The notes: a model not told the origin generated them from the sequence alone. DNA of 64,000 bases from Haplodiscus bocki (GCA_965655095.1 OZ296650.1:28148001-28212000); one strand, 5' to 3'. Numbered from the stretch's first letter, positions 55,447 through 59,104 are shown. Made by a program: numbers and translations.

Positions 55447-56005
55447 TCAGCGCTGATCAGCTCTGATTCAGAATACTTTCAGGTCTGTTTCAGCGCTGTT
55501 CATTACCTGAAAATCTCAACAGCGCTGATTCAGCTCTGAACAGCGCTGAAAACCGAAATTTTCAGAGCTAAAAATCAGCGCTGAAACAGCGCTGTTCAGC
55601 TCTGAAACAGAGCTGATTCAGAGCTGAACAGCGCTGATTTTCTCTGAAACAGCTCTGAAACTGGAAATTTTCAGAGCAAAAAAATCAGCGCTGAATCAGC
55701 TGTTTCAGCGCTGATTTTCTCTGAAACAGAGCTGATTTTCTCTGAAACAGCGCTGAAACACCAAATTTTCAGAGCTAAAAATCAGCGCTGAAACAGCGCT
55801 GTTCAGCTCTGAAACAGCTGATTCAGAGCTGAACAGCGCTGATTTTCTCTGACACAGCGCTGAAAAACCAAAAATCCAGAGCAAGGAAAATCAGCTCTGA
55901 ATCAGTGCTGTTTCAGCGCTGATTTTCCCTGAAAGAGCTGATACCCACCGAAGCCTTCCTAAACAGCTCTCATCATTCCTGATTTTCCCCTGAGACAACG
56001 CTGAA
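55447..56005. repeat. palindromic CAGCGCTG/CAGAGCTG/CAGCTCTG minisatellite
   Basis: Dozens of CAG-NN-CTG octamers spaced ~10-11 bp; cagagc(t/a)a..aaatcag anchors near 55561, 55670, 55768, 55876 give a ~105-bp subunit and ~207-bp higher order. Confidence 0.95.
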
Positions 56006-56029
56006 CATCCCGAGACATCTCATTTTTTT

Positions 56030-56885
56030 CCGCAAACTTCTGCAGGAAAGCTCAGATCTTAAAGCTTTCCTGGAATTTTAGAATTATTCCGTTATGGCAA
56101 AAATAGATCTTATTCTCTTTCCGCAGATTTTCTCTAGGTAACCACAGATCTTAAGCTCTGGAAATTTGGATCTTAGTGTTTTTTCGCAAATTTCTGCAGG
56201 AAAGCTCAGATCTTAAGCTTTCCTGGAAATTTAGAAATTATTCGGTTATGGCAAAAATAGATCTTATTCTCTTTCCGCAGATTTTCTCTATGTAACCACA
56301 GATCTTAAGCTCTGGAAATTTTGATCTTAGTCTTTTTTCGCAAATTTCTGCGGGAAAGCTTAGATCTTATCTTTCCGGGAAATATAGAAATTATTCCGTT
56401 ATGGCAAAAATAGATCTAATTCTCTTTCCGCAGATTTTCTCTAGGTAACCCCAATTCTTAAGCTCTCTGGAAATTTGGATCTTAGTCTTTTTTCGCGACT
56501 TTCTGCGGGAAAGCTAAGATCTTATCTTTCCTGGAAATATAGAAAATATTCCGTTATGGCAAAAATAGATCTTATTCTCTTTCCCCAGATTTTCTCTAGG
56601 TAATCCCAGATCTTAAGCTCTCTGGAAATGTAGATCTGTTTTTTTTTCGCAAATTTCTGCGGGAAAGCTTAGATTTTACGCTTTCTGGAAAATAGATCTC
56701 ATCCTTTTTTTTCGCAAAGGTCTGCAGGTAACCTTCCATTTTATATGCTTTCTGGAAAATTATTGCCTATTCCTCGGCAGAACCTAGATCTCATTCATTT
56801 TTAGTGAGTTGCTGCAGGAAAGTTTAGATCTCACTTGCTGGAATTTCAGATCTCATTCTCCTTCGGTAAAAACTAGATCTTTCTA
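56030..56885. repeat. ~154-bp tandem repeat built of ~38-bp AGATCT-centred subunits
   Basis: gttatggcaaaaatagatc at 56091, 56245, 56398, 56553; decays to the right. Confidence 0.95.
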
Positions 56886-57492
56886 AAAAGAGAAGAAAAA
56901 AATTTTTTTACAAAAAAGAACGATAAAAAAGCATCATTATGAAAAATAGTCTTTTCTCAAGTCTTTCTGTCCAAAAAACTTCAGACACACTGACCAAGGC
57001 CACTTCTCAAGTTCTGTAGGGCATTGACGTTGCTGAAACAGAAAAACAGAAGAAACTAGAAAATGGCACTCGGAGAGCGCAGATCCCGCGAAAGCCCTTG
57101 GAACTCCGATATCCTGGATCGTAACCCAGTCGTTGATATTTCAGATCGCTGATCCCTTTTGTGTCTTTGCGTCCACACAGATTTATAAACGACCATTTCT
57201 CTGGTCATATTGTTTAAGTGTACAGCAGTGGTGCAGACGGGAGACTCCGGAGATGAAGATTCTGGGTTGAAGCCCCGGTGACCACGAAATTTTATAATTG
57301 TCCCGCGGATCAGAACAGTAACAAAATATAAAATTGAAAAATTATCTTTTGTCACCGGGGATCGAACCCACAATCTCTCGAGACTCGCATATATACCACT
57401 CGTCCACCCTTGCGCAAGTCATCGACGGAATAAGTTGTATATATGTATGAACCACTACTGCACTGAAAGACTGGCTATAATTTCCCACTATC

Positions 57493-57709
57493 AAAATCGA
57501 CCAGTAGTTCATGAGAAACAGTTATCCGGATCCCAGATCCGGATTTCAATCCGGATCACGCCCAACTTTGAACTCGGTCTTCCTATGATCATAACCTCCC
57601 TACTCACCAAATTTCATCAAAATCGGACCAGTAGTTTATGAGAAATCCTGCTAACAAACAAACAGACACACGAAGGTGATTGCAATATCCCGCTTTTCGC
57701 GGGATAACA
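57493..57709. repeat. ~217-bp direct repeat copy 1 (element 5' module)
   Basis: Near-identical to 58876-59093. Confidence 0.95.
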
Positions 57710-57725
57710 GACAAACAAAAAATTT

Positions 57726-57799
57726 TGTCCACACAGAGGTTCGAGCTCTCGACTCTCGCGTTTTTAGCACAATGCTCTTACCGACTGAGCTATAGGGCC
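57726..57799 (-). tRNA. tRNA-Ile-derived pseudo-tRNA, anticodon AAA (copy 1)
   Basis: GGCCCTATAGCTCAGTCGGTAAGAGCATTGTGCTAAAAACGCGA...; T-loop CTCGAAC variant; followed by a T-run. Confidence 0.7.
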
Positions 57800-57821
57800 G
57801 TACACATCAAACAAAAAATTT

Positions 57822-57895
57822 TGTCCACACAGAGGTTCGAGCTCTCGACTCTCGCGTTTTTAGCACAATGCTCTTACCGACTGAGCTATAGGGCC
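57822..57895 (-). tRNA. tRNA-Ile-derived pseudo-tRNA, anticodon AAA (copy 2)
   Basis: Identical to copy 1 at 96-bp spacing. Confidence 0.7.
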
Positions 57896-57963
57896 GTACA
57901 CATCTGAATACTATTATCAGATTATTATTATCAGATTACTATTATCAGATTAACAAAAAATTT

Positions 57964-58037
57964 TGGCCACACAGAGGTTCGAACTCTCGACCCTCGCGTT
58001 TTTAGCACAATGCTCTTACCGACTGAGCTATAGGGCC
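57964..58037 (-). tRNA. tRNA-Ile-derived tRNA-like gene, anticodon AAA (copy 3, best fold)
   Basis: 74 nt; GGCC/GGCC-A acceptor end, D stem GCTC/GAGC, anticodon arm TTGTG-CTAAAAA-CGCGA, GTTCGAACC B box, T6 terminator. Confidence 0.75.
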
Positions 58038-58077
58038 GTACACATCTGATTACTATTATCAGATTAACAAAAACCTT

Positions 58078-58151
58078 TGGCCACACAGAGGTTCGAACTC
58101 TCGACCCTCGCGTTTTTAGCACAATCCTCTTACCGACTGAGCTATAGGGCC
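58078..58151 (-). tRNA. tRNA-Ile-derived pseudo-tRNA, anticodon AAA (copy 4)
   Basis: As copy 3 with one D-stem substitution. Confidence 0.7.
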
Positions 58152-58342
58152 GTACTCAGCTGATTAGTCTTATCAGATTACTATTATCCTGGATCTGATT
58201 GAAATCTTGATCCAATCAGGATCTCCAGATAACTGTTATCAGGATCCAACAGGACATCCTGGATCGTAACCCAGTCGTTGATATACATTACCTCCTATTT
58301 TGAGAAATCTTGCTAACAAACAAACAGACAAACAAAAAATTT

Positions 58343-58416
58343 TGTCCACACAGAGGTTCGAACTCTCGACCCTCGCGTTTTTAGCACAATGCTCTTATCG
58401 ACTGAGCTATAGGGCC
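58343..58416 (-). tRNA. tRNA-Ile-derived pseudo-tRNA, anticodon AAA (copy 5)
   Basis: Same body; D-loop GG changed to GA. Confidence 0.7.
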
Positions 58417-58610
58417 GTACTGATCTGATTACTCTTATCAGATTACTATTATCAGATTACTATTATCCTGGATCTAATTGAAATCCTGATCCAATCAGGA
58501 TCTCCGGATAACTGTTATCAGGATCCAACAGGATATCCTGGATCGTAACCCAGTCGTTAATATACATTACCTATTTTGAGAAATCCTGCTAACAAACAAA
58601 CAAAAAATTT

Positions 58611-58684
58611 TGTCCACACAGAGGTTCGAACTCTCGACCCTCGCATTTTTAGCACAATGCTCTTACCGACTGAGTTATAGGGCC
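58611..58684 (-). tRNA. tRNA-Ile-derived pseudo-tRNA, anticodon AAA (copy 6)
   Basis: Same body; substitutions in the D and anticodon stems. Confidence 0.7.
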
Positions 58685-58724
58685 GTACACATCTGATTAC
58701 TATTATCAGATTAACAAATAACTT

Positions 58725-58798
58725 TCGCCACACAGAGGTTCGAACACTCGACCCTCGCGTTTTTAGCACAATGCTCTTATCGACTGAGCTATAGGGCC
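58725..58798 (-). tRNA. tRNA-Ile-derived pseudo-tRNA, anticodon AAA (copy 7)
   Basis: Same body; several substitutions. Confidence 0.7.
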
Positions 58799-58875
58799 GT
58801 ACTCCTCTGATTACTCTTATCAGATTAGTATTATCAGGTTACTATTATCCTGGATCTGATTGAAATCCTGATCCA

Positions 58876-59093
58876 AAAATCCGACCAGTAGTTCATGAGA
58901 AACAGTTATCCGGATCTCAGATCCGGATTTCAATCCGGATCACGCCCAACGTTGAACTCGGTCTTCCTATGATCATTACCTCCCTACTCACCAAATTTCG
59001 TCAAAATCCGACCAGTAGTTTCTGGGAAATCCTGCTAACAAAAAAACAGACACACGAAGGTGATTGCAATATCCCGCTTTTCGCGGGATAACA
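58876..59093. repeat. ~217-bp direct repeat copy 2 (element 5' module)
   Basis: Near-identical to 57493-57709. Confidence 0.95.
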
Positions 59094-59104
59094 ACTAATA
59101 TCAC

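What the first reader, a model, noticed from the sequence alone, without database searches (positions are those of the whole stretch)
57726..58798. All seven tRNA-like copies have an Ile(AAT) body with a fixed AAA anticodon
Seen: the body closely follows eukaryotic tRNA-Ile(AAT) (GGCC..TAGCTCAGT.GGT.AGAGC.T.GTGCTAATAACGC.A.GGTC), but the loop is CT-AAA-AA in every copy while other positions vary. Copy 3 folds with only two mismatches. Known: Phe is normally decoded by tRNA-GAA and functional AAA-anticodon genes are essentially absent; IleRS reads U36 and PheRS reads G34. Inference: most likely an uncharged Pol III transcript, a TFIIIC-binding/insulator array or a tRNA-fragment source whose founder mutation removed it from translation. 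If charged and I34-edited it would read UUU/UUC/UUA.
Basis: partly seen in the sequence, partly recalled or inferred. Interest (0 to 1): 0.75.

Follow-up and report, generated by a model that had tools for sequence, protein, structure and literature searches.

The report
Transposon-borne decayed isoleucine tRNA copies
The seven odd "tRNA-Phe(AAA)" genes are decaying copies of the host's isoleucine tRNA gene, carried as the internal tandem repeat of a rolling-circle transposon present over a thousand times in this genome, so the AAA anticodon is an inherited founder mutation and not a new way of decoding.

Summary
Seven 74-nt tRNA-like units lie on the minus strand at 57726-58798, and all have the loop CTAAAAA. 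Their body matches the host's own tRNA-Ile(AAT) gene at 68 of 74 positions, against 47 of 76 for the host's tRNA-Phe(GAA).

The "fixed" anticodon carries no signal:
- With only 9 variable columns among the seven copies, an untouched anticodon is expected by chance (P = 0.67).
- Genome-wide the anticodon varies as much as other sites (7.9% against 7.0% per site).
- Substitutions in stems break pairs about three times as often as they keep them.
- No sampled copy has more than 19 of 21 pairs.
- The units are 2.5 to 3.5 times more diverged than the non-tRNA part of their carrier.

The carrier is a non-autonomous Helentron (HINE). It has a palindromic 5' subterminal repeat, a (GTTT)n microsatellite, central tandem repeats (the tRNA units), a 3' subterminal repeat, a 3' palindrome and a CTAGTT end. 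The genome holds 919 exact 5' ends and 712 exact 3' ends. One 12.45-kb copy with the same ends carries an open Rep reading frame.

Whether any unit is transcribed could not be tested, because no RNA run was available. Other agents of this scan reached the same reading on other copies in this genome. I found no published HINE with tRNA-derived cargo.

The parts
57726..57799 (-). tRNA-like unit c1 (loop CTAAAAA). It is followed 4 nt downstream by a T6 run at 57717-57722.
   Evidence: Rfam tRNA 35.1 bits. 18 of 21 pairs, 9 differences from host tRNA-Ile, and T54C in the B box.
57822..57895 (-). tRNA-like unit c2, identical to c1 (96-bp duplication).
   Evidence: TRF period 96, 100% matches. Rfam 35.1 bits.
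57964..58037 (-). tRNA-like unit c3, equal to the family consensus.
   Evidence: Rfam 48.6 bits. ARAGORN calls it Phe-aaa. 19 of 21 pairs and 6 differences from host tRNA-Ile.
58078..58151 (-). tRNA-like unit c4.
   Evidence: Rfam 40.5 bits. The D stem is broken at 10:25. A T5 run lies downstream.
58343..58416 (-). tRNA-like unit c5.
   Evidence: Rfam 36.7 bits. It carries G19A and C71A. 18 of 21 pairs.
58611..58684 (-). tRNA-like unit c6.
   Evidence: Rfam 29.0 bits, exactly at threshold. 17 of 21 pairs and G10A in the A box.
58725..58798 (-). tRNA-like unit c7, the most decayed.
   Evidence: Below the Rfam threshold. 17 of 21 pairs. The downstream T-run is broken, reading AAAGTTATTTG.
57909..57952 (-). 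14-bp minisatellite spacer between units. Further blocks lie at 58423-58467 and 58809-58849.
   Evidence: TRF period 14, about 3 copies each. The same spacer flanks units at other loci.
58877..59094 (-). HINE 5' end. It comprises a T-rich terminus, the palindromic 5' subterminal repeat (59070-59090), a (GTTT)n-type microsatellite and the 5' body.
   Evidence: The 5' boundary is shared by 9 independent loci with unrelated flanks. The 33-nt 5' end occurs 919 times in the genome. The palindrome is repeat I10.
57493..57709 (-). Second, internal copy of the HINE 5' end and body. It abuts unit c1 head-to-tail.
   Evidence: 217-nt direct repeat, 95% identical to 58877-59093. The same tRNA-to-5'-end junction is seen in L007 and L011.
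57098..57492 (-). Filler between the internal 5' body and the 3' end. It is other repeated sequence, including an inverted pair of tRNA T-arm-like pieces at 57257-57282 and 57351-57376, and is not part of the tRNA array.
   Evidence: It has no match of 120 nt or more in ten other HINE loci. The inverted repeat is I1. Summed contig depth is high, so it is repeated elsewhere.
57054..57097 (-). HINE 3' end. It comprises the 3' subterminal repeat (57083-57097), a 6-bp-stem palindrome (57066-57080) and the terminus CTAGTT (57054-57059).
   Evidence: The same 3' module and boundary occur at 8 independent loci with unrelated flanks. The 33-nt 3' end occurs 712 times in the genome.

Best explanation
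The seven units are pseudogene copies of the host's tRNA-Ile(AAT) gene together with its T-run terminator. They form the central tandem repeat of a non-autonomous Helentron, a HINE of the DINE-1 type, which lies on the window's minus strand from 59094 to 57054. One captured gene copy had already acquired six changes before it spread: G5C, a D-loop T-to-A, C28T at a CpG, T36A (which turns AAT into AAA), C65G and A67G. Two of these break stems, two turn Watson-Crick pairs into wobble pairs, and none is compensated. That founder was multiplied inside the element by tandem duplication. It was then spread through the genome by rolling-circle transposition, driven in trans by a protein-coding partner that shares the same ends. 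Shown here: the Ile origin, the founder changes, decay without constraint, the HINE anatomy, the copy numbers, and a long copy with the same ends and an open Rep frame. Inferred: the capture event, trans-mobilisation, and the absence of any role in translation.
For: (1) Origin. The consensus unit matches the host tRNA-Ile(AAT) at 68/74 positions and the host tRNA-Phe(GAA) at 47/76. Host Ile genes score 63-67 bits and the window units 29-48.6. (2) Decay, measured on 131 de-duplicated units. Anticodon variability is 0.8, 5.3 and 17.6% per position, mean 7.9%, against 7.0% overall. Paired sites are more variable (9.2%) than unpaired sites (6.0%). One-sided stem changes break the pair 284 times and keep it 90 times, and only 5 cells show a compensatory double change. 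No unit has more than 19 of 21 pairs. Anticodons found are AAA 101, AAG 21, ACA 4, ATA 3, AAT 1 and GAG 1. Genome-wide, 812 of 1098 units keep the loop intact. (3) Folding. The cloverleaf energy is -24.4 kcal/mol for the parent, -16.3 for the consensus unit and -6.3 to -16.3 for the window units. The consensus unit has an alternative fold at -26.1. (4) Relative divergence. Units are 7.0% diverged from their consensus (5.2% in dispersed copies), against 2.0% for the element's 5' body. (5) Carrier. The 5' and 3' boundaries are shared by 8-9 independent loci with unrelated flanks and no target duplication. All HINE substructures listed in PMC4067079 and PMC7492417 are present. The genome holds 919 exact 5' ends and 712 exact 3' ends on both strands. 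(6) Partner. On contig C1 the 5' end lies at 147361954, a Rep domain at 147369799-147370407 and the 3' end at 147374373, all on one strand. The reading frame is open across all 3,609 nt of L051 and holds DUF6570, OTU and Helitron_like_N domains.
Against: No expression data could be obtained, so residual Pol III transcription is not excluded. 132 of 148 sampled units keep a run of four or more T within 15 nt downstream. 30 of 148 keep A and B boxes identical to the consensus, which are the same as the parent's. The A-box region is somewhat less variable (4.6%) than average. The helicase and endonuclease domains of the long copy were not seen, and it is not known whether that copy carries tRNA units. 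The TT target site could not be shown without empty sites. The sample of 131 units comes from one chromosome plus the window and is seeded by a pattern search.
Confidence: 0.9

Rival explanations
1. The units are dead for translation, but a fraction still work as Pol III/TFIIIC cassettes. The transposon family would then have seeded thousands of ectopic Pol III start sites or TFIIIC binding sites. These could act as insulators or as a source of small tRNA-like RNAs that matter to the host or to the element. This reading is compatible with the best explanation as to origin.
For: Each unit is a complete Pol III gene in outline. The A and B boxes are identical to the parent gene in the consensus, and a T6 run lies 4 nt downstream. 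89% of sampled units keep four or more T, and 20% keep both boxes unchanged. The shortest repeat unit (96 bp) is little more than a Pol III transcription unit.
Against: There is no sign of selection. B-box variability is 8.2%, which is at or above the average, and the units are more diverged than the rest of the element. In this window only c3 and c4 keep both boxes. No RNA or ChIP data exist here.
Confidence: 0.12
2. The units are working tRNA genes with anticodon AAA. They would either be charged with Phe or Ile and read UUU, or be I34-edited and read UUU/UUC/UUA.
For: ARAGORN calls three units tRNA-Phe(aaa), and six reach the Rfam threshold.
Against: The founder has two broken stems, and every sampled unit has 14-19 of 21 pairs. 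The cloverleaf is about 10 kcal/mol less stable than an alternative fold. The anticodon drifts to AAG, ACA, ATA and others. The host has canonical tRNA-Phe(GAA) genes at 63.3 bits with all pairs standard. The units travel inside a transposon.
Confidence: 0.01
3. The units are a tRNA-derived SINE (a retroposon), or a free-standing tRNA-derived satellite, that merely lies next to unrelated repeats.
For: tRNA-derived tandem repeats of SINE origin are known, for example Xenopus Satellite 1 and Hydromantes Hy/Pol III, listed in PMC9659126. Arrays of 30-60 kb of this unit exist on contig C1.
Against: A T-run follows each unit directly, so a Pol III transcript could not carry an element body. There is no A-rich or LINE-like tail and no target duplication. 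The arrays sit between constant HINE ends at independent loci. The large C1 arrays also end in a HINE 3' terminus, at C1:36200628 and C1:116729765.
Confidence: 0.03

Closest known systems
HINEs, the non-autonomous Helentrons: DINE-1 of Drosophila, HINE-Cq of Culex, HINE-Mo of a mite (PMC4067079)
   Same: A subterminal inverted repeat a few bases from a T-rich 5' end, with its complement beside it. A microsatellite in the left arm. Central tandem repeats of variable number. A 3' subterminal repeat about 43 nt from the end. A short 3' palindrome. No target duplication. High copy number. A long partner with the same ends that encodes Rep.
   Different: The central repeat is a recognisable host tRNA gene with its terminator, not anonymous sequence. 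The partner's endonuclease domain was not examined.
Cg_HINE and Pearl elements of oysters, which carry satellite-like central repeats (PMC7492417)
   Same: A HINE propagates a tandem repeat across the genome. The same repeat also occurs as long satellite-scale arrays, here 30-60 kb on contig C1.
   Different: The oyster repeats are about 160-170-bp satellite monomers with no known gene origin. Here the monomer core is a 74-nt tRNA-Ile pseudogene.
tRNA-related tandem repeats of SINE origin: Xenopus Satellite 1 and Hydromantes Hy/Pol III (listed in PMC9659126)
   Same: Tandemly repeated units containing a tRNA-related region with Pol III promoter boxes.
   Different: Those derive from SINE-like retroposons. 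These units sit inside a rolling-circle DNA transposon and show no SINE tail or target duplication.
Small-RNA-gene-bearing non-autonomous LTR elements: Cassandra (5S), Helenus and Ajax (tRNA-like) (PMC10886601)
   Same: A non-autonomous mobile element carries a copy of a Pol III-transcribed small RNA gene.
   Different: That is a different transposon class (LTR retrotransposons), and the small-RNA part lies in the LTR rather than in a central tandem array. I read only the title and the start of the abstract of that paper.
Ordinary tRNA pseudogenes, including mis-called 'tRNA-Phe(AAA)' predictions
   Same: The units pass generic tRNA detectors at low score, have broken stems and a drifting anticodon.
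   Different: The copy number is in the thousands, and dispersal is by a DNA transposon rather than by local duplication or retroposition.

Membership tests
Functional cytosolic tRNA gene | Cloverleaf with all four stems paired | tested here: not met
   The consensus unit has 19 of 21 pairs, the window units 17-19, and 131 sampled units 14-19. The host Ile gene has 21 of 21.
Functional cytosolic tRNA gene | Covariance-model score comparable to the host's bona fide genes | tested here: not met
   The window units score 29.0-48.6 bits, with one below threshold. Host Ile genes score 63-67 and host Phe 63.3.
Functional cytosolic tRNA gene | Purifying selection: stems kept by compensatory change, anticodon invariant | tested here: not met
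   284 pair-breaking one-sided changes against 90 pair-keeping ones, and 5 compensatory cells. Anticodon variability is 7.9% against 7.0% overall.
Functional cytosolic tRNA gene | Expressed, CCA-tailed and aminoacylated | not testable with these tools
   No RNA run holds the stretch. The four runs laid are contigs of unrecorded kind.
tRNA-Ile(AAT) descent (origin, not function) | Closest host tRNA is Ile(AAT), far closer than the tRNA matching the present anticodon | tested here: met
   68/74 identical to the C5-array Ile gene, 67/74 to the single gene in L033, and 47/76 to host Phe(GAA). tRNAscan-SE isotype models were not available.
HINE (non-autonomous Helentron) | 12-15-bp subterminal inverted repeats: 2-4 nt from the 5' end and about 38-60 nt from the 3' end | tested here: met
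   The 5' repeat ATCCCGCGAAAAGC starts 5 nt from the end. The 3' repeat GGCTTTCGCGGGAT starts 43 nt from the end. The two are complementary over 11 nt and then differ by one base. The criteria come from PMC4067079.
HINE (non-autonomous Helentron) | Inverted repeat beside the 5' subterminal repeat, and a microsatellite in the left arm | tested here: met
   The 5' repeat is itself a palindrome (I10). A GTCT/GTTT tetranucleotide tract follows about 20 nt later. The criteria come from PMC7492417.
HINE (non-autonomous Helentron) | Short palindrome 8-35 nt from the 3' end | tested here: met
   GCGCTC-TCC-GAGTGC forms a 6-bp stem with one G-T pair, 12 nt from the end, at 57066-57080.
HINE (non-autonomous Helentron) | Central tandem repeats of variable number between constant arms | tested here: met
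   Loci hold 2 to 8 or more units between the same ends. End-to-end distances on C1 range from about 350 to 1,750 bp.
HINE (non-autonomous Helentron) | Insertion at TT with T strings at the boundaries and no target duplication | tested here: inconclusive
   The element begins TTATT and ends CTAGTT, and no duplication is seen at 8 loci. The exact target cannot be read without empty sites.
HINE (non-autonomous Helentron) | Autonomous partner with the same ends encoding Rep-helicase-endonuclease | tested here: inconclusive
   A 12.45-kb copy on C1 has both ends and an open frame holding DUF6570, OTU and Helitron_like_N. The helicase and endonuclease parts lie outside the DNA I could fetch.
tRNA-derived SINE | 5' tRNA-related head whose Pol III transcript covers the whole element, a 3' tail, and target-site duplications | tested here: not met
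   The units lie in the middle and 3' part of the element, and each is followed at once by a T-run. No tail and no duplications are seen.

The most novel reading that the evidence does not exclude
A young, possibly still active Helentron family has used a captured tRNA gene with its terminator as its central repeat. It has thereby scattered several thousand near-complete Pol III cassettes through the genome. A subset with intact A and B boxes would still recruit TFIIIC or Pol III, and would act as mobile insulators or as a source of tRNA-like small RNAs. A tRNA cargo of this kind does not appear in the literature I could search.
Probability: 0.12. Interest if true: 0.6.

Novelty: new variant of a known kind. 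Interest (0 to 1): 0.28.

Why it matters
For annotation: generic tRNA finders will report hundreds to thousands of "tRNA-Phe(AAA)" genes in this genome. These should be masked as transposon cargo and not counted as decoders. For transposon biology: this is a clear case where the origin of a HINE's central repeat can be named, namely a host tRNA-Ile gene plus its terminator. The same repeat has grown into satellite-scale arrays of 30-60 kb, which documents the route from gene to transposon cargo to satellite. If some cassettes still bind TFIIIC or Pol III, the family would be a natural experiment in the spread of Pol III sites, but nothing here shows that.

Tried and rejected
- A whole-genome DNA search with the 74-nt unit returned nothing, because very common words are skipped.
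- My first pattern mis-set the loop length and found only two units, both with a 2-nt insertion.
The per-site statistics therefore rest on 148 units from L001-L034 and the window. The 5' part of the 12.45-kb copy could not be read.
A looser pattern found the gene.
- No RNA run was on offer. The four runs laid are short contigs of unrecorded kind. They show only that the stretch is highly repeated, and give no starts, ends or strand.
- I first considered a SINE or a plain satellite. I rejected both once the shared HINE ends were found.
- The organism was not identified, because run and organism names are coded.
- tRNAscan-SE isotype scoring was not available. Direct comparison with the host's genes replaced it.

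Full report
**Observation**

The stretch 57726-58798 holds seven 74-nt tRNA-like units on the minus strand. Rfam's tRNA model scores six of them at 29.0-48.6 bits, and the seventh falls below threshold. ARAGORN calls three of them tRNA-Phe with anticodon aaa.

All seven read CTAAAAA in the anticodon loop. Six are followed, four bases after the discriminator, by a run of five or six T. In copy 7 that run is broken.

Copy 3 equals the family consensus and has two non-pairs, 5:68 and 49:65.

The contrast "loop fixed, other sites vary" is not informative:
- Only 9 of 74 columns vary among the seven copies.
- The chance that none of them hits the anticodon is 0.67, and 0.39 for the whole loop.
- Copies 1 and 2 are a perfect 96-bp duplication.

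**Origin**

A pattern search of the window's own genome (1.5 Gb) found the host's tRNA-Ile(AAT) genes. One is a single gene on contig C1 (L033). The others form a tandem array of at least 221 copies at a 379-bp period on C5. These genes score 63-67 bits.

The consensus unit is identical to the C5-type gene at 68 of 74 positions and to L033 at 67 of 74. It matches the host's canonical tRNA-Phe(GAA) (L052 and L053, 63.3 bits, all pairs standard) at only 47 of 76 positions.

The six differences from the parent are:
- G5C, which breaks pair 5:68.
- A T-to-A change in the D loop.
- C28T at a CpG, which turns C-G into U-G.
- T36A, which turns AAT into AAA.
- C65G, which breaks pair 49:65.
- A67G, which turns U-A into U-G.

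None of these is compensated. The founder was therefore already a damaged copy, and AAA is one of its six marks.

**Decay**

I took 148 de-duplicated units from loci L001-L034 and the window. Of these, 131 lie within 14 mismatches of the consensus.

| Measure (131 units) | Value |
|---|---|
| Per-site variability, anticodon positions 34 / 35 / 36 | 0.8% / 5.3% / 17.6% (mean 7.9%) |
| Per-site variability, whole unit | 7.0% |
| Per-site variability, paired sites | 9.2% |
| Per-site variability, unpaired sites | 6.0% |
| One-sided stem changes that break the pair | 284 |
| One-sided stem changes that keep the pair | 90 |
| Cells with a compensatory double change | 5 |
| Most pairs in any unit | 19 of 21 |

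The anticodons found are AAA 101, AAG 21, ACA 4, ATA 3, AAT 1 and GAG 1.

Genome-wide, 1098 units match 23 fixed flanking bases, and 812 of them (74%) keep the loop intact. That corresponds to about 4% change per loop site. Units of the element type with AAT are at most a handful.

The cloverleaf energy falls from -24.4 kcal/mol in the parent to -16.3 in the consensus unit and to -6.3 to -16.3 in the window units. The consensus unit also has a non-cloverleaf fold at -26.1.

The units are 7.0% diverged from their consensus, or 5.2% in dispersed copies only. The non-tRNA 5' body of their carrier is 2.0% diverged.

The second half of that criterion, that no transcripts exist, could not be tested.

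**Carrier**

In the orientation of the tRNA units, nine independent loci share a 5' boundary and eight share a 3' boundary. Their flanks are unrelated and there is no target duplication.

The anatomy runs as follows:
- A T-rich start (TTATT).
- A 14-nt subterminal repeat that is itself a palindrome.
- A GTCT/GTTT microsatellite.
- A body of about 200 nt.
- The tRNA units, separated by a 14-bp minisatellite or by a longer spacer.
- A (GTTT)n tract.
- The complementary 3' subterminal repeat, starting 43 nt from the end.
- A 6-bp-stem palindrome 12 nt from the end.
- The terminus CTAGTT.

These are the substructures that define HINEs in PMC4067079 and PMC7492417.

The exact 33-nt 5' end occurs 919 times in the genome and the exact 3' end 712 times, on both strands. 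Distances between paired ends on C1 run from about 350 to 1,750 bp, which fits a variable number of units.

Only 25% of the sampled units match the search pattern. The genome therefore probably holds more than 4,000 units. This is a rough inference.

In the window, the copy is a head-to-tail composite:
- The 5' end lies at 59094 and is followed by the seven units.
- A second 5' end and body (57709-57493) abuts unit 1.
- About 390 nt of other repeated sequence follows.
- The 3' module lies at 57097-57054.

**Partner**

On C1 a 5' end (147361954), a Helitron_like_N Rep domain (147369799-147370407, in a 2203-codon open frame) and a 3' end (147374373) lie on one strand within 12.45 kb. No other ends lie between them.

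The 3.6 kb that I could fetch (L051) is open in one frame throughout. It holds DUF6570, an OTU protease domain and the Rep domain. PMC4067079 lists OTU-like proteases among the proteins that Helentrons sometimes carry.

The helicase and endonuclease parts lie outside what I could fetch. "Autonomous partner" is therefore likely but not shown.

**Mechanism**

Shown:
- The descent from tRNA-Ile.
- The founder changes.
- The absence of constraint.
- The HINE anatomy.
- The dispersal.

Inferred:
- A HINE captured a tRNA-Ile gene with its short trailer.
- The cassette was multiplied by tandem duplication.
- Rolling-circle transposition spread the arrays, driven by the long partner.

On C1 the same unit has grown into arrays of about 60 kb and 30 kb. 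Each of these ends in a HINE 3' terminus. This mirrors the route from HINE to satellite described for oysters and Drosophila.

**What stays open**

Each unit is a Pol III gene in outline, with boxes identical to the parent's in the consensus and a terminator. 132 of 148 units keep four or more T downstream, and 30 of 148 keep both boxes unchanged. In this window only units 3 and 4 do so.

Transcription or TFIIIC binding by some copies is therefore possible but untested. No RNA run was on offer. The four runs that hold the stretch are short contigs of unrecorded kind, which only show that it is highly repeated.

**Novelty**

HINEs with central tandem repeats are well known. In the paper library, 14 papers hold both "Helentron" and "tRNA". 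None describes tRNA-derived HINE cargo in its title or in the start of its abstract, and I opened only one of them (PMC9659126).

The nearest tRNA-related tandem repeats, Xenopus Satellite 1 and Hydromantes Hy/Pol III, are of SINE origin.

Other agents of this scan reached the same reading on other copies in this genome. My tests were run independently on this window and on my own sample of loci.

The finding as posed, a special fixed anticodon, is ordinary. The cargo itself is a modest new variant of a known kind.

Noticed in passing
G000:C5:79526222-79634119 and beyond (loci L035-L042): A tandem array of at least 221 tRNA-Ile(AAT) genes on one strand at a 379-bp period. Some copies are intact (63-67 bits) and some decayed (about 45 bits). 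It is the closest parent type of the transposon's cargo.
   Followed up: partly
G000:C1:36142141-36200660 and C1:116697513-116729797: Satellite-scale arrays (about 60 kb and 30 kb) of the same tRNA-like unit. Each ends in a HINE 3' terminus. The first is rich in an AAG-anticodon variant shared by descent.
   Followed up: partly
G000:C1:147361954-147374405 (L051 covers 147368299-147371907): A 12.45-kb copy with the HINE's 5' and 3' ends. L051 is open in one frame over all 3,609 nt and holds DUF6570, OTU and Helitron_like_N domains. It is a candidate autonomous Helentron.
   Followed up: partly
G000:C1:14078204, 14088675, 14099145; and C1:109366480-109370477: HINE 3' termini repeated at exactly 10,470-bp spacing and at about 1,330-bp spacing. 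This suggests whole elements in tandem.
   Followed up: no
window 57257-57282 and 57351-57376: An inverted pair (26 nt, 85% complementary) of pieces that look like tRNA T-arms of a different tRNA. They lie inside the 57098-57492 filler of the second HINE copy.
   Followed up: no
window 55514-55942 and 56025-56696: Two unrelated tandem arrays just beside the element: a 107-109-bp period with about 3.8 copies, and a 154-bp period with 4.4 copies at 90% identity.
   Followed up: no
G000:C4:12602031 and 12613307 (L052, L053): Two identical canonical tRNA-Phe(GAA) genes 11.3 kb apart. A loose pattern found only these two in the genome, so other Phe genes, if any, differ in sequence.
   Followed up: partly
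G000, many contigs: 147 matches to the Helitron Rep domain. Many lie in open frames of 1,600-2,780 codons, clustered at roughly 15-kb spacing (for example C3:133.75-134.31 Mb and C9:18.6-19.0 Mb). This points to several large Helitron/Helentron families in tandem clusters.
   Followed up: no
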